Below, one piece after another: positions 1 through 27,929 of a stretch of 29,395 nt of DNA (positions within the stretch are counted from its first letter, which is position 1; each line of letters starts with the position of its first letter). The DNA is taken from positions 176,160 to 205,554 of the forward strand of contig RHPI01000733.1 in the NCBI GenBank assembly GCA_009103225.1. The letters run 5' to 3'. The notes under the pieces were generated by a model that worked only from the letters and a program-made list of their open reading frames with translations, did no database searches and was not told the DNA's origin. Source of the stretch: Chlorokybus atmophyticus (lineage: Eukaryota; Plantae; Mesostigma and Chlorokybus algae). The position numbers and the translations under genes are program-made.

Positions 1-5
1 GGCAG

Positions 6-923
6 GTGCACCACCTGCAGGAGACGAAACTTGCTCTACAGCAAGCATTCTCAGTTCGTGATCTTGGAGAGGCCAAGTGGTTCCTTGGCATGGTGATTGA
101 GCGCGACAGGGCGGCTCGCACAATCAAGATCAGTCAGGAGCAGATGGTGAGAAGACTCGTCACCAAGTTTGGGCTCACTGAAGCGAAGACCAAGACCACA
201 CCGTTGGCACTTGGCACTGCCCTCATCAAGGCAAAGGATGAGGAGGTACTCGACAAGGCTCAGTATCCATATGGTGAGCTGGTAGGCAGCATGCTCTATC
301 TGGCAGTGTGCACACGTCCCGATGTTGCACATGCTGTGGGAGTACTTGCTCGCTACATGTCTGCACCGAGCATGGAGCACTGGAGAGCAGCAAAGGGAGT
401 ACTACGCTATGTTGCTGGGAGCGCAACAGTTGGCATCAAGTTTGGGAGCGGGAGCACTGAGTTGGAGGGCTACTGCGACTCGGACTTTGCTGGTGACCTC
501 AACAGCAGGAGGTCCACTACAGGCTACGTCTTCAAGCTGAACGGAGGCGTGGTGAGCTGGAACAGCAGGCTGCAGCCAACAACAGCAGCATCTACATCAG
601 AGGCTGAGTACATGGCAGCGGCAGCAGCAGTGAAGGAGGCACTCTGGCTTCGCAAGCTCATGGCAGACTTGGAGCACCCCATGGCGTGCATCGTCATCAA
701 CTGTGACAACCAAGGAGCCATCAAGTTGTTGAAGCACCCTATCGCCTCGGCAAGGACGAAGCACATTGATGTCATGCATCACTTTGTACGTGACAAAGTC
801 ACAAGGAAGGAGGTGGAGTTCCAGTACTGCAACACCGAGGGCATGCTGGCGGACTTCATGACAAAGCCATTGTCACCACTCAAGTTCAAGACTTGTTGTG
901 CAGGACTTGGCATCTGTGTTTGA
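6..923 (+). CDS. pol: Copia Pol C-terminal part (end of RT + RNase H), partial at 5' end
   Basis: Motifs PYGELVGSMLYLAVCTRPD, GYCDSDFAGD, STSEAEY, CDNQGA, TKHIDV, LADFMTKPL; open to the stop at 921-923; closely parallels the C-terminus of ORF 10927-14808. Confidence 0.95.
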   Translation: MHHLQETKLALQQAFSVRDLGEAKWFLGMVIERDRAARTIKISQEQMVRRLVTKFGLTEAKTKTTPLALGTALIKAKDEEVLDKAQYPYGELVGSMLYLAVCTRPDVAHAVGVLARYMSAPSMEHWRAAKGVLRYVAGSATVGIKFGSGSTELEGYCDSDFAGDLNSRRSTTGYVFKLNGGVVSWNSRLQPTTAASTSEAEYMAAAAAVKEALWLRKLMADLEHPMACIVINCDNQGAIKLLKHPIASARTKHIDVMHHFVRDKVTRKEVEFQYCNTEGMLADFMTKPLSPLKFKTCCAGLGICV

Positions 924-2349: not shown

Positions 2350-4970
2350 TTACCATCCGCGTGTGGGCACACCACTCAAGTACCCCCGAAAAAACTCTTG
2401 GCAGTTGGTAAGATTACTTTCGGGCTCCCACGTGTTGTGCTCAACACCATACCCTTTCCATTCACCAAGTAAGATGGCGCATATCCGCGTCGTGGCTTAC
2501 GGTGACTCATAATTGCTTCCACCTCATACTCGAAAGTATCGTCGCCATCCACTGCAATGGGATGTGGAGGAGGTTGAACCCGACCGTCAGAACGGTATGG
2601 TCTCAGTACACTCACATAAAACACATTGTGAATACGTATCGACTTCGGCAAGTTCAAACGATACGCGCGAGTGCCGACTCGATCAATTACTATGAAAGGG
2701 CCTATCCAGCGAGGAAAACACTTTCGGGTACCCATTCCCTTGATGGATATGTTTTGGGTATTCAGAAGTACTGAACAACCCGCAGCGTAGTTGGCCTCTC
2801 TACGATGCGCATCAGCTTGGGCTTTGTGTCTGTCTTGCGCTGCGCGCACACAGTCCTTTGCCTATGTTAACATATCCTGCAGAGCCGAAGCCATCTCTCG
2901 CGCTGCAGGTACGCGAGTTACGTCAGTAGCGAGCAACTTGAAGTTCGCAGGACTTAGTGGATGCACTCCGTAATTCAAGAGAAGTGGGGTTTCCTGCACA
3001 CTCTCTTGCCATGCATTACTAATCGCGAACTCGCCATTGAAAGATAGACATCCCAATTACTCTGATTCGGACTCACATAATGCCGGATGGTTTCCTCAAT
3101 AACTTGATTGGCGCGTTGTCTGACCATCCGTCTGCGGATGATAAGCTGTGCTCATATTTCGTTAAGTCTGTAAGAAGCTGCATAGCGACTTCCAGAACTA
3201 AGCTACAAACCGCGCATCACAAATTGACACAAAGTTGTGAGGCAAGCCATGCAACTTAAACAAAGATGCGACAAAAACCATAGCTAACTCACGGGAGCCT
3301 ACCTACGTGCGACAAGGGACAATGTGATCCATTTTGGTTAAGCGGTCCACAAAAACTGCAACCGCAGTGTGATCTAATGTTGTCTGTGGGAGTGCAGTCA
3401 TTAGGTCCATACTCACCCTTTCCCATTTGCCATCAGGAACAGGCAATGGTCGCAGCAACTCAGCGGGTTTCAGACGTGGCGGTTTGTCACGCTGACATGT
3501 GTCACACGTGCTCACATAATGCTTTGCGTCAACAAGCACCGATGGCCACCAAAACAACTGTTCCGCTGCCTTAACAGTCTTGCCAAAGTGCCCAGCATAT
3601 GGATCGTGTAAATCAGCTATGCATTTCGTACGCAACCCGGCATGGTTAGGTATCACCAAGCTGGTGCCCACGTAACACAAGTAGTCTCGTTGGTCAAGCT
3701 TTTGCGTGTGCTCTTATGAAGAGAACCATGAGTCTGAAGTATAATACCCTTGCACAACAGCTTGCACAAATTCATCATCCGGAGACAATGTACCGCGCGT
3801 TGCAAGCAATTGCGCACACGTAACTGCCAACAATCACGGACATCGACTTAGAGGATCAGCAACATTAGTTCTGCCTGGCCGGTATACCCATTTTAAAATA
3901 AACTGCGTCGAAAACTCATTCCAGCGAGCTTGTCTATGTGAGAAGTTTTGTTGTGTCGAGAAGTACACCAACGGGTTATGATCAGTCACCATTGTGAACT
4001 AAACCCCCTCCAAGTAACATCGCCATATTTCCAGAGCATGTACTATACCAAGCAACTCTTGCTCAGTGGTAGTGTAGTTCACCTCTGCTGGGATGCACTT
4101 CCTACTCTCATAAGCACAGGGTCTGCCATCTTGCAAGAGACCTGCACCACACCCAAGGGTGGACGCAGCGCTAACCACAGTGAAGTGCTTGTCCCAATTC
4201 GGCAATGCCAAAACTGCAACCGAAGTCAAAGTCAGCTTCCCCTGTTGCATAGCAGCTTCTTGTTCCGCTGTCCACAAGAATGGAGCATCTTGTCGCAATA
4301 GCTTTGTTAAGGGCACCACAATCGTAGAGTACCCCATCATAAACTTGCGAAAGTAGTTTGCCAACCCCCAGGATGATTGCAGCTGATGTGTATTCTTGGG
4401 TTGAGTCCAATCGCTTACAGCTTGCACTTTGCGAGGGTCAGGTTTGACACCCGCATCGCTCACAATGTGCCCCAAGATTGGCAACTCTGTTTTGCAAGAA
4501 TCACACTTTGCAAGATTGGCAAACAAGCGATGTGTTCGCAGTAAGGCAAACACCGCTTCCAAGTGCTGCTTATGCTCTTCTTTGGGTTTTATTAAAGACA
4601 ATCATGTCATCCAAGCAAACCGTAACATACTTGCCAAGTATGCCACCAAAGATCTTATTCATTTCCTTCTGAAACACTGCGGGCGCATTAGTCAGTTTAA
4701 ATGGTAAAACTTTGTACTGATAATGACCTAAAGGTGTTTGGAAATGCAATCTTGCAAACATCACAAGGATGAATCCGGATTTGATAATACCCACTTGTCA
4801 AGTCCAGCATACTAAAGTACGCATTTCCCCAACAGTTTATCAAACACATCATCAATCCGGAGTAACGGGTATCGATTCTTTATCATGATCTTGTTTAACG
4901 CACGGTAATCTACACACATGCGCAGCTTTCCATTCTTTTCCATAACAAACAAGATGGGCGCGCCAAAGGC
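2350..4970 (-). pseudogene. pol: Frameshifted gypsy pol: RT-RNase H-integrase-chromodomain
   Basis: RT: [37 protein letters not shown] (YLDD variant), PILGHIVS. RNase H: AYESRK..YTTTEQELLGIVHAL. Integrase: HDPYAGHFG..CDTCQ, SMDLMTALP, VFVDRLTKM, PRWIGPF..HNVFYVSVLRPY. Chromodomain YEVEAI..YLV(K)WKGYGVEHNTWEPESNL after one frameshift at ~2460. Confidence 0.92.
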
Positions 4971-5614
4971 ATCCCACGCTGCTGCACCGCCCAGCGTCAA
5001 GTTAGTCAGTCAACCCTGCAACCCACCTGCGACAGTGGATACAACATTGCAAGTACAAGCTAGTGTTTGGGGATGTTGAGATGGTTGCTATTTCTGTGAG
5101 CTGTTGACACATTCACATGAGGCATGCGTGCACGTCAGTGTCGGAACAGTTTTTTGCGAGCCAACTGTTGGTGGTTGCGAGACGGTCGAGACAAGTACTG
5201 TCTGCATGTGAAGCATGTGCAAATCTGTAGGTCATATGATGGCAACAACAACAACAACGACAACACAACTTAATGCATGTACATGTCATGCTATTCTAGC
5301 TGAAGTAAAGTCACAAGGCGTTAGAAGCACAGCAACAATGTCGACGAATTATCACCCACCATGCAACCATGTACCTGGGTTGCCCCAACCGGCGCTCATC
5401 ACCCGCACGCCCGCTTATTTCGTCTACCTCATGACACACGAATATAGCATGTGAGGCGTGCAGCTACAACCCCATCCTATAACGTGCACACGTGTGGTGC
5501 AGATAACAATGCTGTTGTTGGCCAAGTATCACCTATCAGCAGATGGCAAACAGCGCAAATTTTGCCATACTTGCAGGTGCCATGAAATAGAACAGGTTTC
5601 AGCCTGCTCTATTT

Positions 5615-6883
5615 CTACCATGACCATGACAATTTACAGGCGCTTATCACTCCTGTCTGTCTTGGAGGGCCTTCACTTTGTTTTATTACTAGAAAGGTGC
5701 GGTGCCTGCCCTCTTGCAGCATGTTATTGTCGAAAGGTACAGTCGCTGTGCTGGGGCGGTTGAGCTTTGTTGCATCACTTGCAAGCACCCGTGTGAGCGC
5801 GGCATCAGCCTCGCCATACTCGTTTTCATTTTTCAACAAGTTTGCCAAGAATTCGAGGGACACGTCCAGCATTAAAGCCAGGTGCTTGAGGACGGCAGCG
5901 GTTACGGGGTGGTCTCAGCCCAGCTTCTTCTTAAAATCTACAAGCGCTCGTCAGAGCTCCGGAAGCGCCACCAGACTGTTGCACCCGTTCAGGCTCAACT
6001 CTTACAGAGCAGCCAGCTCACTGAAGGAATTCGGCAGACCCACCAAGGTGACACACTTGGATAGGTCCAGCTTTTGCAGAGTAGCGAGCTTACCGAAGGA
6101 CACCAGTAGCGCAAGTAGTAGTACGAGGATAGGTCCAGCTGTTGCAGAGCAGCGAGCTCATAAAAAGACTTCGGCAGCGCCGCTAAGCCGATACACTTGA
6201 ATAGGTCTAGCTTTTGCAGTTTTGGCGAGATTGCCAAAGGACTTCGGTAGCACCTTTAAGCTGCCGCACCTGCTCAGGTAAAGCTCATGCAGAGCAGCCA
6301 GCTTGCTAAAGGAGTCTGGCAGACCCGCCAAGCAGCAGCACCCGCTCAGGTTACATAGTCGCAGGGCAGCAAGCTTGCCAAAGGAATCCGGCAACGCCTT
6401 GAATAAGCGGCAATTGAGGATCAGCGTTTGCAGAGCCGTGTGATCTCTAAAAGACTCAGGGAGCGTACTAAAACCCATGTGATCGAGGACTAGAGTTTGT
6501 AGCATAGCGAGCCCGCCATACGCTTCAGGCAGCTCTTTCAACTCGTAACAGCCGCGCAGCACCGAGATCTGCAGCGCCTTGAGGTTGCAGAAAGATTCAG
6601 CCAGCAGCACTGAGACATCAACATTGGAGGTGGTTTGTCCTATAATTAGGACGACCAATTGTGTGCACGCCGCAACATTATGCGATAAAGCGCTCAAAGC
6701 TGCACAACACGGACGCTGCCACTCCAAGTATACTAGCTTTGCAGGGACTCCGTTGGGAAATGTGCCATTCCAACCAGTTGTGAAGTAAAGGTCTAGCAAG
6801 CGGAGATGAGGCATGAAGGGCATGCCATGCAATGTTTCGCTGCAGTTGTCATCCAAAGACATGGTCTCAATGAGTTCGTAGTC
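5615..6883 (-). pseudogene. NLR-like leucine-rich-repeat exon with in-frame C-terminal TPR-like segment
   Basis: Acceptor CTGAACGCAG at 6884-6893. About 9 repeats of ~24 aa (SFxxLxxLxxLxLxxCxxLxxLP) with frameshifts near ~6210 and ~6110 and in-frame stops. Continues as EL*RALVDFKKKLG*DHPVTAAVLKHLA...ENEYGEADAALTRVL. Confidence 0.8.
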
Positions 6884-7369: not shown

Positions 7370-8246
7370 ATGATAGCACTTATGACCGTTTACGATGCTA
7401 TTGGATCGAGAAGCAACGACCGCGGAATTCGTGTGCAAGGCATGAATGTGCAAACCCGGGTCTCAAGCTCCGACACNGTAGTATATGTCAATGAGTTGGA
7501 TGCCACCCTGAGCGAGTCGACGCGCCTGACCCTGAACTACAGTTGGCCCGTTGGCTACACGCTCAAGGAATCTTTCGAGACTGCACAAGCCATCCAAGCG
7601 CTTGGTGTATGAGAATGCAGTGTTGGACATCAACCGCAGCGCCTCACGGCCTGTAGCAAGCACAACTGCCGAGCCCCCTCGCCGCGAACATGGCCGGGAC
7701 ACTCCACCAGCACGCTACAATTGGAAACGGTCAGCGCATATTGCTTTGCCTGCCCCTGTGCTATGTCATCGCTGTGGACGGCATGGGCACTACCAAAAGG
7801 AGTGCACCGAAGAGTACTCAACTCTGGTCTGCGACTACTGTCACAAGACAGGCCACTTACAGACAGTCTGCTGGCTCAAGTTCCCTGAGTTGAGACCCGC
7901 CAACAACTACAACGGCAACAACTCTAGTGGCTACAACAGCAACAACACTGAAGGCCACAACTCTGCTGGCTACAACAGCAACTATACCGGAGGCCTTAAC
8001 AACACCAACAACTACGCCGACGCTTGCAAGGAAGAGCAAGGCTACAGGGGGAAGAATCGCCCTCCTCAGCGCAAGAGACTTGAAGAACGTCCGCGCACTG
8101 CTGCTGTTGCCGCCAAGGCTTCAGCCAACCCGCCAGCTGATGACCATATGGCTGCCCTCATGGCGCGTATGGCACGCTTGGCGGGAAAAAAAGAGCAGGA
8201 CTACCGCGCCTGCTACTCTGCCCGTTGGGCACTGATGGCTCCATAG
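7370..8246 (+). pseudogene. gag: Gag-like region with two zinc knuckles
   Basis: CHRCGRHGHYQKEC and CDYCHKTGHLQTVC (both CX2CX4HX4C) in ORF 7551-8246, followed by an Asn/Gly/Tyr-rich repeat. Apparent frameshift near 7600. Confidence 0.75.
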
Positions 8247-10220
8247 CGCACGAGAGACACCAGTACTCCGTCACGTATTTAATCATTCCGACGGGTTTGA
8301 GGGGAAGCCGCAACGTCGTCAGCAGCTACCTCCTTCAAAGCCACCAGGGGTGGTGCACCAGCAGCAACAGCTACACCGGCTACGACGTCGAATCCTTCAA
8401 CGTCCGTTGCAACTACTCCAGTTGCACCAGAAGTTGGTACATCAGCCAGCGCCATGACGCAAACACGGGGGAGCACGTTGGCGACAGCCACTGCTGTCAC
8501 TGACCTTGCAGCAATAAGTCGCACGAGTCCCGCGCCAATTACAGGACCACCTGTGTCAACGAGCGTCGAGACCACTCTCGCGCCACTGAGCGGCACTCTC
8601 GCCACCACCGGCAATGCCATCGTCGAGCCCGCTGCCACTGTAGCGACACACGCAGCTACATTGCCCGCTGTCGACGTCACTCAAGCTGCCCCGCGAGGTC
8701 AGCTGAGCGTGCATGGGCGATCATCATGCGTGGAGCAGATCCCACTACCATTGCTTTTGGGCGCGAAGGGGAGCGCACAACACGCATTGAACGCAGAGAC
8801 CGAGTCTTCTCATTGCCTGAATATCACACCCTGCCAGAACAGACTCAGCAACAATTAGAAGATGAAATGCTCGCCGGCACGGCGCCTCCCATGCGAGATC
8901 GCGTCTTCGTGGTCAGATTACCTGTTGTACTGGAGTTGGCACTACGACTGTTTTGGACTCTGCATAACGATATGCAGACTACGCCACGCTAGCCCGCACC
9001 AGTCCGTCATGAACCCTTTGAGCCAAGCCCGCTGGACATGTATTCAGACCAGCAACCCAACGTATAGCAGCACATCGCTGGTACAGCCGACATACCTCTG
9101 GGTGACAACGAAGCACTGAGACCCCTCAGTGCCGTTCGGCTTCATGAGCGCTACATCGCTCTGGAATAGGCGTGCACCTGGCGACAGGACCAAATGGCAG
9201 CAATCGATGCAAGAGCGCAAGCCCTTGCCGCTGCTCGCGCTCTCGTTCTTCAACCAACAGTCGCTGGCCCATCATCCAGCACAACAACTCTCGCTGGTGA
9301 GCCCAACAATGACCAGGCGAGGGCACTGGCCCAACAAACCAGGGGGTGATCGCCCCGATGCTACCCCCCTTGGAAGGATTGCCTGACGATCAACGAGATC
9401 CAGGGAGAGGCTACCTCGCACCACAAGGGTGTACACAATGGGATGGAGCAGGCTTGATCAAAGAACAGCAACTTCACACAGCCCTGTTGCGACAAACAAC
9501 CATGCTGCATCGATAAGAAGACATTGGCCTGAGACGGATGTTGGGGATGCGAGAAGGTGGTAATGCAGCTCGAGCAAGACTGGTGACTTGGCTAGTCACC
9601 AATCACCCCGCAGCCTCCCTGTTCGCACTCAGCACCGAATTGTTTTGGGTTGGACGCCTTCCTGAGCTCGCTACGGCAAGCCTATGACGAGGTTGCCTCG
9701 ACAGCCACTGACACCTTAAAAGAAGCGCAAGAGGCCATACTCAGGTTGCCAGGGGTGGAAGCTGTGCGACAACGCCGACGCATCGCAGCTCCTTTGGATG
9801 ACAAGGATGGAGAGGTTTAAAGATATCTGCCTCCCGAGCTGGTGGCTCGCACTCGCTCTCACCGAAGGTCAGCTGCAGCAGCCACCTACAGGTCGTTGTC
9901 GACAACCATTCACAGGTCAGCTGCAGCAGCCACCCACAGGTCGGTTTCAAGAACCACTAACAAATCAGCTGCGGTGGTCACCCACAACTTTGACCAAGAC
10001 TCTCCTATCCCATACGACGAGTCTCAGGAAGATGCCACTGAATAAGTGGCCCACCCAAAACCAGCGAAAAGCCGCTGGCGCGCACAGGTGGTCGCGGAAT
10101 CTACTACTGACAAGACCACGGCTCACTTCACAATTCCCTCTCTATGAGGACCAAGCTGCGGTCCAGGAGCAACACCAAGTGGCCGTTAGAGTAGTGGAGT
10201 TTCACGTATTCCGTCGATAA

Positions 10221-10479
10221 CAAGGCATCACCGCGGAACTATTTGGAGGAATATGTAGTGGCCTCGCCGCTGTCCTTTACACTGGCGCGACGGTCACCAA
10301 GTAATTCTACTACTGTGACCCTGGTCCACATGCACAGATTGCCCTGGGCCACCACCTGTGCCACCTATAGATATGCTACCCGCTGCGACTGCCGCTGTTG
10401 GCATGACAAGGCAGTTTGAAGGCACTGCTAAAGGACATCCGTTTAAACACTAAGGATCACCTCCTGGCGGTGGGCAACA
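10221..10479 (+). pseudogene. C5-cytosine DNA methyltransferase, N-terminal part (motifs I-III)
   Basis: Reading through stops in the frame of ORF 9798: QGITAELFGRICSGLAAVLYTGATVTK*FYYCDP...ALLKDIRLNTKDHLLAVGN. ELFGxxxxG at 10236-10262 is motif I-like, YYCD is motif II-like and KDI is motif III-like. Confidence 0.75.
10475..10479. repeat. Target-site duplication CAACA (left copy; right copy 15534-15538)
   Basis: The same 5 bp flank both LTRs; removing the element plus one copy restores the methyltransferase reading frame. Confidence 0.93.
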
Positions 10480-10881
10480 TGTTGAGAAGCAAGCATGCAA
10501 GTGAAGAGGGCAAGCAATGACACACAGGAGAAGGCAACACACTTCCCAATTTATTACCAACAAACTGCGGGGTTATATACCCGCCAGTTAGTACACAGTT
10601 TGTACACACTGCTGGTCTAAACGCAACAGCGTCCGATCTACTGAACCGAATCCTACGCTGTAAGATGTGACACGTAGCTAACTTGACAAGCTTTCCAACA
10701 AGCTATGCCACGTCCCAAATGACTGAGTATTCTAGGAGATATGACGATTCTCCTAGAACCCTTCTCTGCAGTCCGCGCCAGGACCTTTATGTCCGGAGTC
10801 TTCGAGGTCCTCCCATCGAGGTCCCTTCTCTTCTCTCTTGTATGCAGGGCAGGCTGACCGGATGTAGGAATATCTTCAACA
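10480..10881 (-). repeat. 3' LTR of intact copia (402 bp)
   Basis: Direct repeat of 15132-15533 with 4 substitutions by manual alignment; ends TGTTG...CAACA. Confidence 0.97.
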
Positions 10882-10890
10882 CTCCCACGC
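10882..10890 (-). other. Polypurine tract of intact copia
   Basis: GCGTGGGAG on the element strand abutting the 3' LTR. Confidence 0.85.
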
Positions 10891-10926
10891 GGGCAGCTTG
10901 GCCTCCAACGCTTGGTCTTCTTTCAA

Positions 10927-13900
10927 CTAAGCACATATGCCGAGTCCCTTGCAACATGCCTTGAACTTCAGCGGTGACAGTGGCTTCGTCATGAAGTCTG
11001 CGAGCATGTCTTCCGTATTGCAATATTGGAACTCAACCTCCTTGCGTGTGACTCTGTCTCGCACAAAGTGATGCATGACATCAATGTGCTTTGTCCTTGT
11101 CGAGGCGATGGGGTGCTTCAGCAACTTAATGGCGCCTTGGTTGTCGCAGTTGATCGTGATGCACGCCATCGGTTGCTCCAGATCTGCCATCAGCTTGCGA
11201 AGCCATAACCCCTCCTTCACTGCAGCCGATGCTGCCATGTACTCCGCTTCCGAAGTAGATGCAGCTGTTGTGGGTTGCAGCCTACTGTTCCAGCTCACCA
11301 CGCCTCCATTCAACTTGAAGACGTACGCCGTGGTGGACCTCCTGCTATCGAGGTCACCTGCAAAGTCTGCGTCGCAATAGCCCTCCATCTCTGTGCTTCC
11401 GCAACCAAACTTGATGCCAACACTTGCGCTTCCAGCCACGTAGCGCAATACTCCCTTCGCTGCACGCCAGTGCTCCATGCTTGGTGCAGACATGTAGCGC
11501 GCAAGCACTCCAACTGCATGTGCGATGTCGGGTCTTGTGCACACTGCTAGGTAGAGCATACTCCCAACAAGCTCACCATAGGGATACTGAGCCTTGTCGA
11601 GTACTTCCTCATCTTTCGCTTTGACGAGGTTGGTGCCGAGTGCCAATGGAGTAGACTTGGTCTTTGCTTCATTGAGTCCGAAATTGGTGACAAGTTGCTT
11701 TACCATCTGCTCTTGACTGATCTTGATTGTGCATGCTGCTCTGTCACGCTCTATCACCATGCCAAGAAATAACTTGACCTCTCCAAGGTCGCGTACTGCG
11801 AATGCTTGCTGCAATCCGTGCTTCGTTTCCTTCAGGTCTTCAACTTGCTTGGCCGTGACGATGATGTCGTCCACATACACGAGCAAGTAAACCTTCTTCT
11901 CTTCATGGATGAAGAGCCCCGGATCCGCTGAGGATGCTTTGTAGCCGAGTTTCTCCAACTCTTTCGTGAGGCGAATGTGCCACACACGTGGTGCTTGTCG
12001 CAGCCCATACAAAGCCTTGATCAACTTGCAAGCCATGCCTGGCTCCCCTTCTGCGTAGCCTGGTGGTTGCTTGGTGTAGATCTCTTCCTCCAGCTCTCCG
12101 TAAAGGAAAGCAGTCTTCACATCAAGGTGGTGACACTCGAGGTCTTCAGCAGCAACCATGGCGATTAATGTGCGGAAGGTTGCATGCTTACTTGCAGGTG
12201 CAAATACTTCATTGAAATCCACACCTTCTTGTTGCAAAAATCCCTTTGCCACCAACCTTGCCTTGTAGCGCTCGATGTTGCCTTGACCATCACGCTTCAC
12301 CTTGAACACCCACTTGACCGGAATGGGCTTCACACCTTGCGGGGGCTTCTCCAACACCCATGTGTTGTTGGCATGGAGTGATGCAATCTCATCATCCATA
12401 GCTCGCTGCCATTGTTCTGCATCTGGTGCTCGCAATGCCTCCTCGTAGGTGCTTGGTTCTTCACTCTCGTCATTGTGCACACTAGCGATGTGTGCCTTGT
12501 AGAAGTCAGGTGCTTGTCTTTCCCTCACTGGGTAGCGTCGAGCTTGCTCCTGCTGCTTCTGCTTCTCGCCTGCTACAGATGAGCCCTGCTCTTTATTGAT
12601 GACTGATGCCTCGCCTTCAACCTCTTCTCTGCTTGAAAGCTCTTCAGGTTGTGCTTTGTCATCTTCATCTTGAGGGTAGAAACCTTCTTCAGCTTCAACT
12701 TGTGATGAGCCTTCGTGGAACACGACTTCTCTGCTCACCACAATCTTGCGCGTGTCCTCCAGTAGGACCTTGTACGCCTTTGAGCCTGGTTCGTAGCCAA
12801 CGAAGATGCCCTTCTTGCTGACCGGCTCCAACTTGTGTCGCAATTGACTTGGCACAAGTGCATATGCCACACATCCGAACACACGCATGCCACTCACATC
12901 TGGCGCTTCACCGTAAAAGAGCTCCCACGGAGTCTTTTGCTCAGAGCTTATCGGTGAACGGTTGCGGATGTAGTTGGCAGTGAGAACGGCCTCTTTCCAC
13001 AGACTGTCCTCCAACTTGGTGTCATTGAGCATGGCTCGAACACGCTCCAACAACGTTCGGTTGAGACGTTCAGCTGCTCCATTCTGCTGCGGAGTGTATG
13101 GTGCTGTTGTCTCATGCCGTATGCCTTTGCTGGCGAAGAACTCTTTGAGCTGGGCGTTGATGTACTCCCCTCCTCGATCACTTCTCATTGCTTTCATCTT
13201 CTTGCCCGATTGAATCTCAAGCAATGCAATGACTGTACGCACAGCTCCAGCGACTTCTGACTTTTGAATCAAAGGGAAGACGATGGAAAGCTTGCTGTAG
13301 TCGTCGAGGAATGTTGCAAAGTACCTTACCCCTCCTTTCGCCACAATGCGCATAGGCCCGCAAACGTCCATGTGCACAAGCTCGCAGGGATGTTTGCTAC
13401 TTGAAGAAGATGATGAGAACGGCATGCGATGCTGCTTGGCCAACACACAGGGTTCACAGAGCGTAGTTGAAGACGCTTGAAAATCTTCCTTGCTCCCAGT
13501 AATGCCCTTCACCATGTCTTCAGCGACCAGGCGTGTGAGGTTGCTGTAGCCCAAATGCCCGAACCTTCGATGCCAAAGCTCAGCCGTCTCCTTCTCCTTC
13601 ACAATCATGGCCTTGCTGCCATGAGTCTGCTCCACAATGTAGAGCCCTCCTCGTTGGGTGCCGACCATGTACTCGACCCCATCCATGCGTACGGAGCAGC
13701 GTCCCTCCCGGATCACTATCTCAGCTCCCACGCGCTCAGCAACTCTCACAGAAAACAAGCTTGCAGCAGCTCCAGGTACGTGCAATACTTCACGCAGTAC
13801 CACCTCTCTCTCACCATCACCAATCTTGCATTGAAGCCTCACTTCACCAACTCCTATTGCTTCCAACTCGTGACCACTAAAGCCTTCCACCTTCCTTGTG

Positions 13901-14808
13901 GTTGACATCTTCCTGTAGTTCTCCATCACCTCCTTGTGCGGTGTGAGATGCTGGTCACAGCCTGAGTCAATTGCCCATGAAGTTGTATCAAACTTCCTTG
14001 AGGCAGTAAATGCAACACCCTTTTCTTTGCGTTGAGCGTTGCTACTGGTGCCTGCTTCAGATTGCTCTCGTTGGCGCTTACGACAATCCTTTGAGATATG
14101 TCCTTTAATACCACAATAGTGGCATGTGAGATTCTTGAACTTTGAGTTGCTGCCTTTCGCCTTGTTCTTGTCTTCATAGTTGCTTAATTTCTTGTATTTG
14201 TCTCGTGTGTAGAAGGCCACAGAGTCCGCTTGCTCTTCCTTCTTTGAGACGCGTTGCTCCACAGTGAGCAACTTGGGTAGCACATCGTCTAGGGTTAGCT
14301 CCGATGACGATGTCTCGAGCAGAGTAGCGACAACTTCGTACTCTAATGGCAGTCCTGCAACAATCGCCAATACGACCTCCGTCTCTTCCATCTTGTGGCC
14401 GACGTTGATGAGGTCCGCCCACAGCTCTCTCGCACGTGCAACATACTTTGTGACCGGCTCGGCCGTCTCTTTATGAAGCGCGCTTAGCTGCTTGCGTAAT
14501 TGTATCTTTCTGGCGTTGTTCTTGGCTTGAAATACGGCTGCAAGCTTCTCCCAAGCTTGTCTGCCATCTTCACATGCTGTGAGCATGGGAAAGTGATGTG
14601 GCTTGCAGTTAAGCACCATCAAGGAATGTGCTTCAACTGAGTGTTCAAGCCAAATGCTTTCTTCTCCTGCTCTTGGTGCAGATGCCTTCGGGTCAACATA
14701 CTTCCACATCTTCTTGTGGATCAGTAGTGCCTTCATCTCTACACACCAAGTGCTGTAATTGTTTGTGTCCAGCTTTGTGATCAGCCCCTTATCGTAGCTT
14801 GCCTCCAT
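10927..14808 (-). CDS. gag-pol: Copia Gag-Pol polyprotein (1293 aa)
   Basis: Gag with CHYCGIKGHISKDC; protease WAIDSGCDQH; HRRFGH..CEPC; integrase HMDVCGP/DDYSK/SDRGGEY/GAAERLN; RT KARLVAKG, LDVKTAFL, LVYVDD; RNase H DADFAGD/EAEY/DNQGA. Integrase precedes RT (copia order). Confidence 0.98.
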   Translation of the reverse strand: MEASYDKGLITKLDTNNYSTWCVEMKALLIHKKMWKYVDPKASAPRAGEESIWLEHSVEAHSLMVLNCKPHHFPMLTACEDGRQAWEKLAAVFQAKNNARKIQLRKQLSALHKETAEPVTKYVARARELWADLINVGHKMEETEVVLAIVAGLPLEYEVVATLLETSSSELTLDDVLPKLLTVEQRVSKKEEQADSVAFYTRDKYKKLSNYEDKNKAKGSNSKFKNLTCHYCGIKGHISKDCRKRQREQSEAGTSSNAQRKEKGVAFTASRKFDTTSWAIDSGCDQHLTPHKEVMENYRKMSTTRKVEGFSGHELEAIGVGEVRLQCKIGDGEREVVLREVLHVPGAAASLFSVRVAERVGAEIVIREGRCSVRMDGVEYMVGTQRGGLYIVEQTHGSKAMIVKEKETAELWHRRFGHLGYSNLTRLVAEDMVKGITGSKEDFQASSTTLCEPCVLAKQHRMPFSSSSSSSKHPCELVHMDVCGPMRIVAKGGVRYFATFLDDYSKLSIVFPLIQKSEVAGAVRTVIALLEIQSGKKMKAMRSDRGGEYINAQLKEFFASKGIRHETTAPYTPQQNGAAERLNRTLLERVRAMLNDTKLEDSLWKEAVLTANYIRNRSPISSEQKTPWELFYGEAPDVSGMRVFGCVAYALVPSQLRHKLEPVSKKGIFVGYEPGSKAYKVLLEDTRKIVVSREVVFHEGSSQVEAEEGFYPQDEDDKAQPEELSSREEVEGEASVINKEQGSSVAGEKQKQQEQARRYPVRERQAPDFYKAHIASVHNDESEEPSTYEEALRAPDAEQWQRAMDDEIASLHANNTWVLEKPPQGVKPIPVKWVFKVKRDGQGNIERYKARLVAKGFLQQEGVDFNEVFAPASKHATFRTLIAMVAAEDLECHHLDVKTAFLYGELEEEIYTKQPPGYAEGEPGMACKLIKALYGLRQAPRVWHIRLTKELEKLGYKASSADPGLFIHEEKKVYLLVYVDDIIVTAKQVEDLKETKHGLQQAFAVRDLGEVKLFLGMVIERDRAACTIKISQEQMVKQLVTNFGLNEAKTKSTPLALGTNLVKAKDEEVLDKAQYPYGELVGSMLYLAVCTRPDIAHAVGVLARYMSAPSMEHWRAAKGVLRYVAGSASVGIKFGCGSTEMEGYCDADFAGDLDSRRSTTAYVFKLNGGVVSWNSRLQPTTAASTSEAEYMAASAAVKEGLWLRKLMADLEQPMACITINCDNQGAIKLLKHPIASTRTKHIDVMHHFVRDRVTRKEVEFQYCNTEDMLADFMTKPLSPLKFKACCKGLGICA

Positions 14809-15117
14809 CTTTGCCGCGCCTGCTTTCTTCTTGCAGTTAGCACTTGAGACTTGCTTTGATAATCTTCACGTGTTGTGACTTGAGTGACTTTGTTGACTTC
14901 AGTAACTTTAATCAACACTTCACTTTTGAGTGACTTCAATGACTTCGGTCTTGAATGTCTTCGGTCTTCACTTCACTCTTCAACGCCTTCAGTCTTGAGT
15001 GACTTCGGTCTTCTTTTCACTCTTCAATCTTGAGTGACTTCGATCTTCACTTCAATGCACTTTGTCACTTTTCTTCACTTCGCTTTCTTTCTCTTTCTCA
15101 CACTTTTCACGCGTAGT

Positions 15118-15131
15118 GTGGGCCCATAACC
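15118..15131 (-). other. Primer-binding site for the 5'-half of initiator tRNA-Met
   Basis: GGTTATGGGCCCAC follows the 5' LTR. It is complementary to the anticodon-stem region of plant-type tRNAiMet (GUGGGCCCAUAACC), the half-tRNA priming mode known for Drosophila copia and Volvox Osser. Confidence 0.9.
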
Positions 15132-15533
15132 TGGTGAGAAGCAAGCATGCAAGTGAAGAGGGCAAGCAATGACACACAGGAGAAGGCAACACACTTCCCA
15201 ATTTATTACCAACAAACTGCGGGGTTATATACCCGCCAGTTTGTACACAGTTTGTACACACTGCTGGTCTAAACGCAACAGCGTCCGATCTACTGAACCG
15301 AATCCTACGTTGTAAGATGTGACACGTAGCTAACTTGACAAGCTTTCCAACAAGCTATGCCACGTCCCAAATGACTGAGTATTCTAGGAGATATGACGAT
15401 TCTCCTAGGACCCTTCTCTGCAGTCCGCGCCAGGACCTTTATGTCCGGAGTCTTCGAGGTCCTCCCATCGAGGTCCCTTCTCTTCTCTCTTGTATGCAGG
15501 GCAGGCTGACCGGATGTAGGAATATCTTCAACA
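15132..15533 (-). repeat. 5' LTR of intact copia (402 bp)
   Basis: Partner of 10480-10881; on the element strand it begins TGTTGAAGAT and ends CTCACCA, directly before the PBS. Confidence 0.97.
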
Positions 15534-15538
15534 CAACA

Positions 15539-16275
15539 TTGTCCTACTGATAGCAGAATGGGAGTGTCAAAGACACTCCAGAGCAGGTAGAGTCGAAGGA
15601 CTCACTGATCCATGCTCGCGACTGTTCAGGGAACTGATGCGTATCATCAAGATCCTGCAAAGCAATTAGCTGACCAGGCTTCCAGGGTACATCATTGAGA
15701 ATGTGCACTCCGAGGACGATAAGCGCCATCACGTGTCCAACAGCTTTCGACAAGTGTGTTCCTTACTGGGACACCCTCTCAAAATCAATGCAGCGCGTCA
15801 TGGCTCCCGTGTTCATCGCGTCCGCGCCAAGTGGACCAACCTTGCTATAGTCGAGGATCTCTTTGCTGCTAAGTCTCTGCACAGAAGTCGTTCACGCAAT
15901 CTCACCGTCGACGCTATCCGAGACACTGGGCGCACAGCACAACCAGTCACCCGACACGATCAGCAGCACTTCTATCAGTGCAACCAGCCTGATCAACCAC
16001 ATCGTGCGCTCCCCACTCTGGTGTCTTACCCAGGATCATACGCCTTCCGCAACCACGGCGCAGTCATGGTGTTGGATTCCAACACAGGCCAACTGGAGGA
16101 ACCCAACGCACGTGAGAGCAAACGTGCCATGGGATTCTCTCCAGGTAGTATCACAGGTACCACGCTGACCGGCAGTCAGCAATGTCATCTATTGGGACGC
16201 GCCATGGACCAGAACAGCATGGTGTGGTTATTGCAAATATGCTTTGCTCTCCAGGACCGCCATGTGTCCTTCTAG
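15539..16275 (+). pseudogene. C5-cytosine DNA methyltransferase, C-terminal part (motifs IV-X)
   Basis: VLLIAEWECQRHSRAG (motif IV, Cys codon 15565-15567), SRLFRELMRII, YIIENV (motif VI, 15697-15705), NAARHGSRVHRVRAKWTNL (VIII), EEPNARESKRAMGF (IX), HLLGRAMD (X). One in-frame stop at 15667-15669. Confidence 0.88.
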
Positions 16276-16559
16276 GAGCTCGAACACCTGGCGGGGGGGT
16301 GGCCAATTGCGTGCAAGAGACCAAAGCGGCACATACCGCCCATATGGAGGAGCAAACAGCAGTCATTATGGAAGACATCCCAGTAGTCGCCAACGCTACC
16401 TTTTGGTCCCATGGCATTATACCACTGGCTATAGGCCAGACGCGAGAATAACTTGAGGCTCTTCTCAACAAGTGGAGGAGTCAATTCAGCTTCAGCGTGA
16501 AAGAACCGGGCGTTTGGTCAATTTATTAGATGGACATTGAGTTGGTGGACACCAAACTG

Positions 16560-17830
16560 GTGTTTCGATGATAGTATCGATTCTCCAAGTTGCAAGAAGA
16601 CTTGGTGGAGCAGAGGTGCAAGGCTCTGCTAGATGCAGGCCTGATTGAGGAGTCTACATCGGACCTGGCGGCCGCAACCGTCATGCCCCTAAAGAAGGAT
16701 TCAGCAGGCAACTGGACAAACCGGCGTATGTGCGGCGAATACCGCCCCCGCAACAACAAAACCAAGCAAGACAGGTATCCAATGCTTACGGCAGAAGGTA
16801 TATTTAAATGATGTAGGAGACTGTACCGTCTTCAGCGCCCTGGACATGCGCCAAGGGTACAACCAGATTGCCATCAAGGAGGAGGACAAGCACAAGACCT
16901 CCTTTTGGGGCAACCGGCAGCTGTACTAGTGGAAGGTCATGCCCATCGGACTGAAAAATGCTCCCGCCAAGTTCCAGCGCGTTATGGACAAAGCTTTTAA
17001 GGGGCTCGACTTCGCGTGATGCTATATTAATGACATTTTCATCTTCAGCCGCAACAAAGAAGAGCACCTACAGCACATCGAGGAAATGCTGGAGAGACTC
17101 AAGGGGGTGGGGATGACGGTGCACCCCGACAAGTGCACCTTCTTCACTCGCAAGGTACCCTACTTAGGGCACATAATTTCGCCCCACGGTGTGTACGTAC
17201 AGCAGGCGAAGGTGGAGGCCTTGATAGCTATCCCTGCTCCAACGGACCTTACTCGCCTGCGCGCCTTGTTGGGCTTGGCCAACGACTATCGCCAGTTCGT
17301 GAAGGACTTCGCAAAGATCGCGCGACCCCTCAATGAGCTTCTGAAGAAGGAAGTGGAGTTTGCGTGGAAGGAGCCACAGCAGCAGGCGTTTGAGGAGCTA
17401 AGGAGCAGGCTCACCACCGCTCCCATCCTGCAACGCCCTAAGTACAGCAAGCCCTTCATCCTCCACACCGACTGGAGCAAGCTTGGGATGGGGGCTGTGC
17501 TGCACAATGAGAACAAAAAGGATTGAGTGGTGTCGTATGCCAGCCGAAGCAACAATTGCGCTGAGGCCAACTTCAGCAGCTACGAGGGAGAGTGCCTCGA
17601 TACAGTGTGGGCTATCTCCTTCTTCAGACCTTTCCTCTTTGGTCGGCGATTCCAGCCGATCATCAGCCACTCAAGTGGTTGACCAACCAACGTGTGACAG
17701 GGAAACTTGCTCGCTGGGCCCTGTTGTTGCAGGAGTGTGACTTCGAGATCGATCACCGCGCCGGCCTCATCAACCAGGACGCCGATGGCTTCAGTCTCAA
17801 TCCTCATCGCAGTACCAATGATGCAACTGG
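16560..17830 (+). pseudogene. pol: Gypsy reverse transcriptase and RNase H (degenerate)
   Basis: RRMCGEYRP..DRYPM, FSALDMRQGYNQI, WKVMPIGLKNAPAKFQ, CYIND (YIDD variant), PYLGH, LLGLANDYRQFVKDFAKIARPL, FILHTDWSKLGMGAVL, SYASRS..SSYEGECL, DHQPLKWL..KLARWALLLQE. Confidence 0.93.
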
Positions 17831-18039
17831 AGCTCGGCACGAGCTCAAGCTTACAGCAGCAGCTCCCACCGTGGCGGCCATGTTTGCTGTTGCCGCGTTA
17901 CGTTCATGGCGCCAAATCAACACCACCGCCATTTAAATGGCAGAGGAGATTCCTGCCCTTGAGTCTATAGGCCCCACAGTGACCACACCCCTAGGGGACG
18001 TCCATGCGGTCGACATTGCAATCAATTGAAGTTGACGAC

Positions 18040-18695
18040 ACCGAGCTAGCACCCACTTACACCAGGCAGAACATATGGCTGGATAAGCCATCACTCTCCT
18101 TCCTTTAAAGGACAGCTTCCCCCCGACATGAGTGCACGAGAGAAAGATCGTGTCAGTCAACGCACCCGCCACTATCGATGGGCGGATGACACGTTGTATC
18201 GCCGCGTCCATGACGAGGACAAGGAGGTGCCGACATCAGCCACACGCAAGGGCATCATCGCTGCCCTGCACACTGAGCTTGGACACTTCGGTGTCAAGCG
18301 TACCGTCAGCCAGGTAATGCGCAATATTGGTGGTATGGGCTGTCCAAACAGGTGAGGGAGTTCGTCAGTCACTGCCAACAGTGTGACATGGTACGCGCCA
18401 GCCTCAACACACGTAGCACCACCTTGCACCCTTTCCCCATCTCCGGTCTTCTCTATCGCTGAGAACTCGACATTTTGAGAGACTTGGCACCCTCGGCACG
18501 GCAACCGTTACATTCTGATTATGATCGAGCACTTCTTCAAATGGGTGGAGCTGGTGCCATTACCCGACAAGAGCAGCAGGGGGGTGTCTCAAGCCTTCCT
18601 CTCCATGGCCTCAGCCGGTTTGGTAGGTGCGCTAAGGTCATCATAGACTAAGGCACTGAGTTCAGAGGGGAGTTCAACAACCTGTTGGACAGATG
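18040..18695 (+). pseudogene. pol: Gypsy integrase N-terminal half, truncated
   Basis: LHTELGHFGVKRT..CQQC (HHCC), GNRYILIMIEHFFKWVELVPLPDKSS, SRFG..VIID*GTEFRGEFNNLLDRC; homology ends at ~18695. Confidence 0.88.
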
Positions 18696-19450
18696 CACCG
18701 GTAGAAATGGGTTACAGCAAGTCAGGCTGGATCCACAACTTTGTTTGTGATTTTGTGCAAAGTTTGTTGAGGATCTGCAAGAACCCTAATTAACTTATGG
18801 CTACATACTTAATCCGGTTTGTGCCTGTCACAAAAGCGCTTTCTCGTTGACACTTCCTTGCGAATAGATCCACAATTAAGTTGTGGATATGTCTTGAACA
18901 AACTGCCATCAACCTCTGTTAATGCTCTATACTATATAGATACCTAACAAAGTTGTGACCTCCTCCGGCTTTTGTGACCCATGATCAAAGGCCCTAACAA
19001 GATTGTGACTTGAACTTGATAATACTTTTAAGTTGCAGTCACAATATACTCTTGGTTAACTCCGCAACAGTGATCTCACAACACGATTTTGTCCTAATGC
19101 CTAAGCAAGTTGGGACCAGCTCCAATTTAATTTGACGAGCTCGCAAAGGGTCCAATCAAATTGTGGCCCCATGCGAAACAAAATTCACACTCAAGGCATA
19201 AACAGTTACTTGCTTATTTATCACTTGCCCTAGCTCTAAATGTTATGACCGCATCCATAACTTCGTTCAGCCTAACACCCAGTGTCTTTGTGTGTTTCTT
19301 GCTGAGTCCCAAATCTTATGACCACAACTGTGTCCAGCCTTACACCTGTGTCGTTGTGTGTTTTTTGCTAAATCCTAAATGTTGTGGCTACTTTCACAAC
19401 TTGTTATATTGTCACCCAGTGCTGTTGTGTGAATGGTCTGCGTTTCAAAC
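18696..19450. mobile_element. Probable terminus of a CACTA/EnSpm-like DNA transposon with subterminal repeats
   Basis: Starts CACCGGTAGAAATGGG exactly where the integrase breaks and resembles the CACTAGTAGAAA-type TIR. It is followed by many TTGTGAC/GTCACAA-like motifs in both orientations and a ~67-bp duplication (19267-19390). The partner TIR was not found in the window. Confidence 0.55.
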
Positions 19451-27412: not shown

Positions 27413-27561
27413 TTTTTGCCGCAGCATAGGCAAGGCCACTGAGGGGTTATGCCCAAGGCTGCCCCAGCGGCTTGCAGCAAACAGCTTTTGTGCCGCAGCA
27501 CAGGCAAGGCCACTGAGGGGTTATGCACAAGGCTGCCCCAGCGGCTTGCAGCAAACACAGC
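27413..27561. repeat. Two tandem ~74-bp units
   Basis: TGCCGCAGCA.AGGCAAGGCCACTGAGGGGTTATGC.CAAGGCTGCCCCAGCGGCTTGCAGCAAAC occurs twice. Confidence 0.9.
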
Positions 27562-27865
27562 ACGCACCGCACACACACACACACACACATGCATGGAATG
27601 CGCAAGGAAGCACGGCATGCACGTATCTGCTGTGTAGCCGCTAGCGCTCCAGCATCGCCGCCGCCGCCGACGACGACGATGACCTTGCCTGCGCCGGCGC
27701 CGCCGCCGCCGACCTTGACTAAAATCTGCATGCGACGTATCTGCCTGAGTTTCTTGCTAGGAACTCAAGATCGCTGGCGCCGTCGCCACCGACCTCAAAG
27801 ACTTCGCCGCCAACCACGGCAACCTCGCCGCCTCCCGGCCACAACCTACAACAACATGTCCGGGC

Positions 27866-27882: not shown

Positions 27883-27929
27883 TGACATATGGCGAAACAG
27901 AGTCACAAAAACATTCACCCAGTCCACAC

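What the first reader, a model, noticed from the sequence alone, without database searches (positions are those of the whole stretch)
7370..18695. Ty3/gypsy retrotransposon carrying its own C5-cytosine DNA methyltransferase between gag and RT
Seen: once the copia is removed in silico, a collinear set of C5-MTase-like motifs appears on the gypsy strand: ELFGRICSG (I), YYCD (II), KDI (III), AEWECQ (IV, Cys retained), YIIENV (VI), HGSRVHRVRAKWTNL (VIII), EEPNARE..AMGF (IX), LLGRAMD (X). They are in one frame with only point stops, lie ~300 bp upstream of RT, and sit downstream of a double-knuckle gag. Known: DNMT-bearing retrotransposons have been reported in Symbiodinium dinoflagellates and in charophyte algae such as Klebsormidium, so the class has precedent but is rare. 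Inference: this element encoded the MTase in its polyprotein, possibly to methylate its own cDNA or alter host silencing. WEC instead of the usual PC in motif IV may be a family signature. If the host is a chlorophyte, this could extend the known range.
Basis: partly seen in the sequence, partly recalled or inferred. Interest (0 to 1): 0.9.

Follow-up and report, generated by a model that had tools for sequence, protein, structure and literature searches.

The report
Dead methyltransferase-carrying Gypsy retrotransposon copy
This is a real but dead and truncated copy of a green-algal Gypsy retrotransposon that carries a DNMT3-type DNA methyltransferase, a kind of element already published in 2018 for another alga, so the interest lies in the wider family rather than in this copy.

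Summary
A young, intact Ty1/copia sits at 10480-15533 with a CAACA target duplication. Removing it in silico joins 10221-10479 to 15539-16272 into one frame. That frame aligns without a gap over about 330 residues to the methyltransferase domain of more than 150 retrotransposon polyproteins (blastp E 1e-50 to 1e-60).

The domain is Dnmt3-type. Its family profile and a confident model of a relative both match DNMT3A/3B best.

Downstream, RT, RNase H and integrase follow in the same order as in relatives with gag-PR-DNMT-RT-RH-IN polyproteins. Among named organisms these include Closterium.

This copy is dead:
- four stops lie inside the methyltransferase
- the copia sits 26 nt before the catalytic Cys codon
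- the rest of pol has frameshifts
- the RT active site reads YIND
- the integrase is cut at about 18700
- no protease can be recognised

The odd "WEC" motif IV is a true family signature: Glu precedes the catalytic Cys in 108 of 157 relatives and Pro in 43.

The class is published (KnitGypsy-Dnmt3, Klebsormidium, 2018). This scan has already noted the same family elsewhere in this genome.

Extras found here: the lineage is large, reaches a chlorophyte (Monoraphidium), and places the methyltransferase at two different positions in pol.

The parts
7551..8246 (+). gag-like ORF (231 aa) with two CCHC zinc knuckles (7764-7805, 7830-7871) and an Asn-rich tail
   Evidence: PF00098, E 4.4e-4, 20.7 bits against a cut-off of 20.8. 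tblastn of the Closterium P0171 knuckle region gives E 4e-4. Membership in the same element is inferred only from its position upstream on the same strand.
8247..10217 (+). Unassigned stretch where relatives have the rest of gag and the aspartic protease. No protease is recognisable. It holds a 48-bp tandem duplication at 9866-9961.
   Evidence: No Pfam hit. tblastn with seven relatives found nothing beyond the knuckles. An HMM of relatives' PR region against six-frame pieces gave a best E of 0.27.
10221..10479 (+). N-terminal part of the Dnmt3-type methyltransferase domain (motifs I-III). In-frame stops at 10302, 10368 and 10404; stop at 10218 just before it.
   Evidence: tblastn with P0169 over 10236-10481 gives E 4e-6 alone.
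10475..10479 (.). Target-site duplication CAACA of the copia insertion; the second copy is at 15534-15538
10480..15533 (-). Nested young Ty1/copia element. LTRs at 10480-10881 and 15132-15533 (about 99% identical). Intact 1293-aa gag-pol ORF at 10927-14808.
   Evidence: Pfam hits for RVT_2, rve, Retrotran_gag_2 and others.
15539..16272 (+). C-terminal part of the methyltransferase domain (motifs IV, VI, VIII, IX, X). Catalytic Cys codon at 15565-15567. In-frame stop at 15667; stop at 16273 after the domain.
   Evidence: Pfam PF00145 on the motif IV piece: E 0.0056. phmmer E 1.9e-41. Alignment A1..
16404..17340 (+). Linker and reverse transcriptase, with a frame change near 16805. The active-site box reads YIND at 17023-17034.
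   Evidence: tblastn with P0169/P0172/P0154/P0171: 39-53% identity, E 1e-100 to 1e-127. Pfam RVT_1 tail. Translation.
17365..17930 (+). RNase H domain, with a frame change near 17660
   Evidence: Pfam RT_RNaseH_2 E 4e-15. RT_RNaseH E 7.6e-5. tblastn.
18107..18700 (+). Integrase: H2C2 zinc-binding region and part of the catalytic core, in two frames. Homology stops at about 18700 and AT-rich unrelated DNA follows from about 18745. The C-terminal part that relatives have, with a PHD finger in some, is missing.
   Evidence: Pfam Integrase_H2C2 E 2.8e-4. tblastn ends at query residues 2053 of 2327, 2120 of 2352 and 2078 of 2358. No continuation anywhere in the window. Sequence.

Best explanation
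The stretch is a decayed, 3'-truncated copy of a Ty3/gypsy retrotransposon. In living relatives one polyprotein reads gag - protease - Dnmt3-type C5 cytosine methyltransferase - RT - RNase H - integrase, with a terminal PHD finger in at least one. The methyltransferase is an integral, selected part of pol in this lineage and not a host gene fragment lying next to an element.

Shown: homology, domain order, fold type, the family-wide Glu-Cys catalytic loop, purifying selection in relatives, and the death of this copy.

Inferred, following the published proposal for such elements: in live copies the domain, made with RT and integrase, methylates the element's own new cDNA or its landing site. 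The new copy would then carry a host-like CG mark rather than being treated as foreign.

This particular copy does nothing now. It has stops, frameshifts, a mutated RT box, a lost integrase end and no recognisable protease. A young copia then landed 26 nt before the catalytic Cys codon.
For: - **Copia excision.** Removing the copia with one TSD copy restores a gap-free alignment to relatives across the join.
- **Homology.** phmmer gives 560 hits, the best at 1.9e-41. blastp of the X-read domain reaches 1e-59.
- **Domain order.** The window is collinear DNMT-RT-RH-IN with P0154, P0169, P0172 and Closterium P0171. P0022 shows zf-CCHC, Asp protease, PF00145, RVT_1, RNase H and integrase in one ORF.
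- **Dnmt3 type.** The profile's best PDB hits are DNMT3A/3C/3B (1e-19 to 1e-17), ahead of DRM (1e-11) and M.HhaI (1e-9). The AlphaFold model of P0022:960-1300 has pLDDT 94. Its top 50 Foldseek hits are all DNMT3, with TM 0.70 by the model and 0.81-0.84 by the target.
- **Catalytic residues.** Across 157 distinct domains, the catalytic Cys, the ENV Glu and Asn, the RxR motif and the motif I glycines are conserved at about 80-90% or more.
- **Selection.** dN of the DNMT domain among three intact copies is 0.18-0.23 with saturated dS, so dN/dS is about 0.1 or less.
- **Clade.** In the DNMT tree the window falls in the clade of elements with DNMT before RT (SH-aLRT 99).
- **Copy number.** Two public runs from two studies hold 443 and 189 contigs at 80-99% likeness along 15539-18695.
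- **Precedent.** PMC5890265.
Against: - No window piece on its own reaches the Pfam gathering score. The motif IV piece scores 16.6 bits against 22, and the 201-aa piece has no Pfam hit.
- No protease is detectable.
- No LTR or split repeat flanks the element in the window, so its ends, and whether the gag part belongs to it, are not proven.
- No methyltransferase activity has been shown for any Gypsy-borne DNMT. The Klebsormidium domain gave no methylation in yeast.
- Pro of the canonical Pro-Cys dipeptide is replaced by Glu.
Confidence: 0.88

Rival explanations
1. Composite locus. Only 10221-18700 (DNMT-RT-RH-IN) is a fragment of the methyltransferase Gypsy, truncated at both ends. The gag-like ORF and the 2 kb after it (7370-10220) belong to another element or to unrelated DNA.
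For: No protease and no homology to relatives between 7900 and 10200. The spacing from the knuckles to the DNMT is 2.3 kb, against 0.7-1.75 kb in relatives (coordinates). There are no terminal repeats. Relatives have about 340-530 residues of gag before the knuckles. That leaves little room here before the LRR ORF, which ends at 6862.
Against: The gag ORF lies on the same strand and in the right order. Its double knuckle resembles that of Closterium P0171 (E 4e-4). gag evolves fast, with only 51-60% identity between copies whose DNMT domains are 71-76% identical, so missing homology is weak evidence.
Confidence: 0.25
2. The family's methyltransferase-like domain is no longer a DNA methyltransferase. 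With Glu in place of the loop Pro, it could serve as a DNA- or chromatin-binding or regulatory module (as DNMT3L does for DNMT3A), or it could act on RNA.
For: Glu precedes the Cys in 108 of 157 domains. The Klebsormidium Gypsy domain gave no methylation in yeast (PMC5890265).
Against: The catalytic Cys, ENV, RxR and the SAM-binding motif I are kept in about 80-90% or more of members. A dead module would be expected to lose them. A minority of members keep Pro-Cys, scattered through the tree. The domain is under purifying selection.
Confidence: 0.25
3. A fragment of a host Dnmt3 gene lies next to an ordinary Gypsy RT by chance or by a one-off transduction.
For: Only that this copy is broken and lacks its ends.
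Against: 21 polyproteins have the same DNMT-RT order in one ORF. The window's domain groups with them at SH-aLRT 99. It shares the family-specific GWECQ and GR.MD motifs. The family is multicopy across the DNMT-RT junction in two runs.
Confidence: 0.02

Closest known systems
KnitGypsy-Dnmt3 of Klebsormidium nitens (de Mendoza et al. 2018, PMC5890265)
   Same: An LTR/Gypsy-type retrotransposon with an unrearranged Dnmt3-type domain inside the Pol ORF. The copies are intronless, motif X is poorly conserved, and the domain is under purifying selection. The paper notes DIRS-like split repeats, and I saw similar ones in relative L007.
   Different: No Klebsormidium sequence was available to compare directly. 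The best database identities to the window are only 46-51%, so this is probably a different host and sub-lineage. The paper's text, as far as I could read it, does not give the position of the domain in pol or the Glu-Cys loop.
SymbioDIRS-Dnmt3 and SymbioLINE-Dnmt of Symbiodinium (same paper)
   Same: Retrotransposons that carry a C5 methyltransferase in their coding region. The DIRS one is Dnmt3-type and methylates CG de novo in yeast.
   Different: The backbones differ: DIRS with a tyrosine recombinase, or LINE, against Ty3/gypsy with a DDE integrase here. The paper treats them as independent captures.
Host DNMT3A/3B/3C (animals) and plant DRM
   Same: Best sequence-profile and structural matches. 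Motifs I-X are in the same unrearranged order as DNMT3. Motif X is 'GR...' as in DNMT3.
   Different: About 20% identity. Glu replaces Pro before the catalytic Cys in most members. There is no PWWP or ADD domain. The domain is embedded in a retroelement polyprotein. DRM has a circularly permuted motif order, and this family does not.
EpiLTRs and DAM-LTRs (bioRxiv 10.64898/2026.05.21.726589)
   Same: Ty3/gypsy-like elements that captured DNA methyltransferase modules, some between RT and integrase.
   Different: Those carry adenine (Dam-like) methyltransferases, and DNMT4-related cytosine ones in Euglena. That preprint lists the streptophyte Gypsy-DNMT3 as a separate, earlier case.

Membership tests
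C5 cytosine DNA methyltransferase (PF00145), Dnmt3 type | Motif I (FxGxG, SAM binding) | tested here: met
   The window has ELFGGICSG at 10239-10265 in frame. The motif I glycines are conserved at 80-90% in 157 relatives.
C5 cytosine DNA methyltransferase (PF00145), Dnmt3 type | Motif IV Pro-Cys with the catalytic Cys | tested here: inconclusive
   The Cys is present (15565-15567) and is kept in 90% or more of the family. The Pro is replaced by Glu in the window and in 108 of 157 relatives; 43 keep Pro.
C5 cytosine DNA methyltransferase (PF00145), Dnmt3 type | Motif VI ENV and motif VIII RxR | tested here: met
   The window has YIIENV and HRVRAKWTN. The family conserves E, N and R.R at about 90%.
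C5 cytosine DNA methyltransferase (PF00145), Dnmt3 type | Significant profile match | tested here: met
   The window pieces alone fall below the Pfam cut-off (16.6 bits, E 0.0056). The X-read domain matches relatives at 1e-50 to 1e-60. 20 of the 26 rows of A1 hit PF00145, with a best E of 8e-16. The family profile hits DNMT3A at 1e-19.
C5 cytosine DNA methyltransferase (PF00145), Dnmt3 type | Fold: class I SAM methyltransferase with a DNMT3-like target-recognition part | tested here: met
   Tested on a relative of the same clade, not on the broken window copy. The model has pLDDT 94. The top 50 PDB matches are all DNMT3A/B/C, with TM 0.70 and 0.81-0.84 and E 1e-18.
C5 cytosine DNA methyltransferase (PF00145), Dnmt3 type | Open reading frame and enzymatic activity | tested here: not met
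   This copy has four internal stops and a 5-kb copia inside the domain. The activity of intact relatives cannot be tested with these tools.
Gypsy-DNMT3 retrotransposons (KnitGypsy-Dnmt3 kind) | Ty3/gypsy pol order RT-RH-IN with a DDE integrase | tested here: met
   tblastn and Pfam place RT at 16404-17340, RH at 17365-17930 and IN at 18107-18700.
Gypsy-DNMT3 retrotransposons (KnitGypsy-Dnmt3 kind) | Dnmt3-type domain inside the same pol ORF | tested here: met
   The window is collinear and on the same strand, and intact relatives have one ORF (P0022, P0154, P0169, P0172, P0171). In the window itself the ORF is broken.
Gypsy-DNMT3 retrotransposons (KnitGypsy-Dnmt3 kind) | Terminal repeats (split, DIRS-like layout according to the 2018 paper) | tested here: inconclusive
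   None are found around 7370-18700, but the 3' end is missing. Relative L007 has split repeats on both sides of its ORF.
Gypsy-DNMT3 retrotransposons (KnitGypsy-Dnmt3 kind) | Aspartic protease between gag and the rest of pol | tested here: not met
   Not detectable in 8247-10217 by Pfam, tblastn or a custom HMM. Relatives have D[ST]G[ASC] 150-270 residues before the DNMT.
Gypsy-DNMT3 retrotransposons (KnitGypsy-Dnmt3 kind) | Direct sequence relationship to the Klebsormidium elements | not testable with these tools
   No Klebsormidium sequence surfaced under a name. The paper's alignments are images.

The most novel reading that the evidence does not exclude
Gypsy-DNMT3 elements are not a Klebsormidium oddity. 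They form one old, large lineage of green-lineage retrotransposons with these features:
- They occur in streptophytes (Closterium, the window's host) and in at least one chlorophyte (Monoraphidium).
- They form hundreds of 50%-identity clusters in environmental data.
- They share one captured Dnmt3 domain with a derived Glu-Cys catalytic loop. A PHD-tailed integrase occurs in both layouts.
- The methyltransferase sits at two places in pol, PR-DNMT-RT or RH-DNMT-IN, and the two layouts separate on a single branch of the domain tree.

This implies one capture followed by a move within pol. In the papers I could read, none of this is described.
Probability: 0.5. Interest if true: 0.55.

Novelty: new member of a known kind. 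Interest (0 to 1): 0.35.

Why it matters
A transposon that carries the enzyme hosts use to silence transposons is a striking case of a parasite adopting host epigenetic machinery. So far it rests on one streptophyte genus and on dinoflagellates.

This copy adds little, because it is a dead relic. It does show that the family occurs in a further genome. Following it up showed that the family is large and spans streptophytes and a chlorophyte. The family keeps its catalytic residues under selection while replacing the canonical Pro of the Pro-Cys loop with Glu. That gives a concrete, testable question: do EC-type Dnmt3 domains methylate DNA, and in which sequence context? It also gives a set of intact sequences with which to test it.

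Tried and rejected
- **Pfam on window pieces.** Only the motif IV piece gave a sub-threshold PF00145 hit, and the 201-aa piece gave none. I therefore relied on relatives.
- **Search with the 201-aa piece.** The search for homologous proteins found nothing, which reflects its length and word limits and is not evidence of absence.
- **Host identification.** An exact look-up of the copia protein found nothing. A homology search with it gave a best identity of 54% and no names. The sequencing runs are coded. NCBI assembly accessions came without names. I could not name the host. 'Chlorokybus' comes only from other agents' notes.
- **Klebsormidium as host.** It looks unlikely, because its TE-inclusive proteome should have given close hits. 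This is not proven.
- **Protease.** Pfam, tblastn with seven relatives and a custom HMM found nothing. A 'LVDTGGP' string in a minus-strand ORF (8282-8680) had no Pfam support, and I dismissed it as chance.
- **Integrase continuation.** I looked for the missing integrase end or a PHD finger downstream of 18700 and found none.
- **Terminal repeats.** None were found around the element.
- **CpG depletion.** CpG observed/expected does not set the element apart from its surroundings.
- **Iyer et al. 2011.** The paper is not held in the library.
- **Rejected readings.** Chance motifs and a juxtaposed host gene fragment are both rejected (see the rival explanations).

Full report
**1. The observation**

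A Ty1/copia element lies on the minus strand inside the region.
- Its LTRs are at 10480-10881 and 15132-15533, with 399 of the 403 compared positions identical.
- It is flanked by the 5-bp duplication CAACA (10475-10479 and 15534-15538).
- Its 1293-aa ORF (10927-14808) is intact and has all copia domains.

Deleting the element and one duplication copy joins 10479 to 15539 and keeps one reading frame.

The frame has stops at 10218, 10302, 10368, 10404, 15667 and 16273, and no frameshift. The first and last stops flank the domain. The catalytic Cys codon is 26 nt after the join.

**2. Is it more than chance?**

Yes.
- The 201-residue piece 15670-16272 finds 560 proteins at E <= 1e-3 and 303 at E <= 1e-10 among 1.84 billion representatives. 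The best is at 1.9e-41 with 46% identity. Many hits are 1500-3000 residues long with the match in the middle.
- The domain read with X at each stop aligns over 320-360 residues to more than 150 of them at E 1e-48 to 1e-60.
- In the multiple alignment the two halves meet across the copia site without any gap. The copia therefore hit a single continuous domain.

**3. What the domain is**

- Pfam scores the window's motif IV piece below threshold (PF00145, 16.6 bits, E 0.0056) and misses the longer piece.
- 20 of the 26 rows of alignment A1 hit PF00145, with a best E of 8e-16.
- A profile of the family finds DNMT3A, 3C and 3B first in the PDB (1e-19 to 1e-17). Plant DRM follows at 1e-11 and M.HhaI at 1e-9.
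- An AlphaFold model of the domain of P0022, a member of the window's clade, has a mean pLDDT of 94. Its 50 best Foldseek matches are all DNMT3 chains, with TM 0.70 by the model and 0.81-0.84 by the target.

So the domain is Dnmt3-type, with the ordinary unrearranged motif order.

Across 157 distinct family domains the following are kept in about 80-90% or more:
- the motif I glycines
- the acidic residues of motifs II and III
- the catalytic Cys
- E and N of ENV
- the RxR of motif VIII
- the E..RA.G and GR.MD motifs

The residue before the catalytic Cys is Glu in 108, Pro in 43, Ser in 3, Asp in 2 and Cys in 1.

**4. The element**

The window is collinear with polyproteins that read zf-CCHC, aspartic protease, DNA_methylase, RVT_1, RNase H, integrase. 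These are P0022/P0154, P0169, P0172 and P0171 of Closterium sp. NIES-53.

| Part | Window coordinates | Notes |
|---|---|---|
| DNMT | 10221-16272, less the copia | four internal stops |
| linker and RT | 16404-17340 | 39-53% identity to relatives |
| RNase H | 17365-17930 | |
| integrase | 18107-18700 | truncated |

Frames change near 16805 and 17660, between 17930 and 18107, and near 18320. The RT box reads YIND.

Integrase homology stops at about 18700. That is 230-280 residues before the end of the relatives, which in P0172 carry a PHD finger. No continuation exists elsewhere in the window.

Upstream, a 231-aa ORF (7551-8246) has two CCHC knuckles that resemble those of the Closterium element.

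Between the knuckles and the DNMT lie 2.3 kb in which I found no protease and no similarity to relatives. Relatives have the D[ST]G[ASC] motif 150-270 residues before the DNMT.

No terminal repeats flank the element. The 3' end is therefore lost. The 5' end is not defined, since 7370 is only an ORF start. Whether 7370-10220 belongs to the same element is likely but not proven.

**5. The family**

Among 227 relatives the DNMT lies before RT in 21. It lies after RNase H and before integrase in 82, and a further 41 show DNMT followed by IN.

On a tree of the DNMT domain the two layouts separate on one branch (SH-aLRT 99). The window sits in the 'before RT' group, nearest to P0169, P0170 and P0172. 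Both groups share the GWECQ loop, and PHD-tailed integrases occur in both (P0172, and P0005/P0009). This points to one capture and a later move within pol. Without an outgroup this is an inference.

Three intact copies of the window's clade differ by dN 0.18-0.23 in the DNMT with saturated dS. dN/dS is therefore about 0.1 or less. RT, RH and IN have dN 0.07-0.14. The domain is under purifying selection.

Named hosts are Closterium sp. NIES-53 and NIES-54 (a streptophyte genus) and Monoraphidium neglectum XP_013895387.1 (a chlorophyte, RT-DNMT-IN layout with the GWECQ loop). Most other hits are environmental contigs.

**6. This copy and its kin at the DNA level**

Two public runs from two studies (organisms coded) hold 443 and 189 contigs at 80-99% likeness along the whole of 15539-18695. 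Of these, 30 and 10 are 99% or more alike. The family is therefore multicopy.

Of the 40 best-supported places where other copies differ from the window, the window has T or A against C or G at 26. The reverse holds at 3 (table 3). This copy has thus collected C-to-T type changes. That is the usual fate of methylated, silenced repeats, although a general GC-to-AT mutation bias would look the same.

**7. Mechanism**

Shown: the domain is a conserved, selected part of pol in living relatives.

Inferred: it acts on the element's own DNA. De Mendoza et al. (PMC5890265) proposed this for the Symbiodinium DIRS elements, where the cDNA would be methylated upon reverse transcription and so avoid recognition as foreign.

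Two points count against a simple reading:
- In that study only the Symbiodinium DIRS domains methylated yeast DNA. The Klebsormidium Gypsy domain did not.
- Most family members have Glu instead of the canonical Pro next to the catalytic Cys.

I put about 0.5 on 'active DNA methyltransferase that marks the element's new DNA' and about 0.25 on 'non-catalytic or RNA-directed module'.

**8. Comparison with what is known, and novelty**

The class was published in 2018 as KnitGypsy-Dnmt3. Papers of 2025 and 2026 still cite only that work for streptophytes.

Other agents of this scan have already described the same family elsewhere in this genome and name the host Chlorokybus. I could not test the name.

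The best protein identities to public collections are only 46-54%. This argues against Klebsormidium nitens, whose TE-inclusive proteome is public, but does not prove it.

I file this as a new member of a known kind: real, correctly read, but dead, and of moderate interest. The wider points (family size, a chlorophyte host, the Glu-Cys loop, two positions in pol) are the part worth following.

Broken frames were read with X at the stops only.

Noticed in passing
window 10480-15533 (minus strand): The nested Ty1/copia has an intact 1293-aa ORF, LTRs about 99% identical and a clean 5-bp TSD, so it is a recent and possibly still active family. Its best public protein relatives are only 54% identical.
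   Followed up: partly
window 1-923 (plus strand): A second copia of the same family, cut by the window edge. By eye, its 305-aa ORF is about 90% identical to the C-terminus of the intact copia.
   Followed up: no
window 2376-4973 (minus strand): Another, ordinary Ty3/gypsy fragment (RT-RH-IN) with no methyltransferase. It matches the DNMT-carrying relatives only in RT, RH and IN at 24-38% identity.
   Followed up: partly
relatives P0001-P0227: The methyltransferase sits at two positions in pol: before RT in 21 proteins and between RNase H and integrase in 82 or more. The two layouts fall on opposite sides of one well-supported branch of the DNMT tree and share the GWECQ loop, and PHD-tailed integrases occur in both. 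This suggests a domain move within pol.
   Followed up: partly
L006:1-18357: The contig that encodes P0172, one of the window's nearest relatives, is a perfect head-to-tail repeat with a period of 8261-8262 bp at 100% identity. The cause could be a tandem array, a circular form read round and round, or an assembly artefact.
   Followed up: no
L007:8595-18801: The element encoding P0169 is flanked by split, permuted repeats rather than simple LTRs. 8595-9040 recurs at 18355-18801. 9368-9667 recurs at 17465-17764. 17146-17442 recurs at 18038-18334. This fits the 'DIRS-like repeat structure' remark of the 2018 paper.
   Followed up: partly
window 15539-18695: Of the 40 best-supported places where other copies in two public runs differ from this one, the window has T or A against C or G at 26, and the reverse at 3. 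This is a C-to-T type decay signature in a methyltransferase-bearing element.
   Followed up: partly
   Followed up: no
window 27413-28275 and 29041-29395: Several arrays of about 70-bp and about 130-bp tandem repeats near the window's end.
   Followed up: no
window 6158-6862 (minus strand): A 234-aa leucine-rich-repeat ORF lies directly upstream of the gag-like part. It leaves little room for a full-length gag and hints that the Gypsy is also damaged at its 5' side.
   Followed up: no
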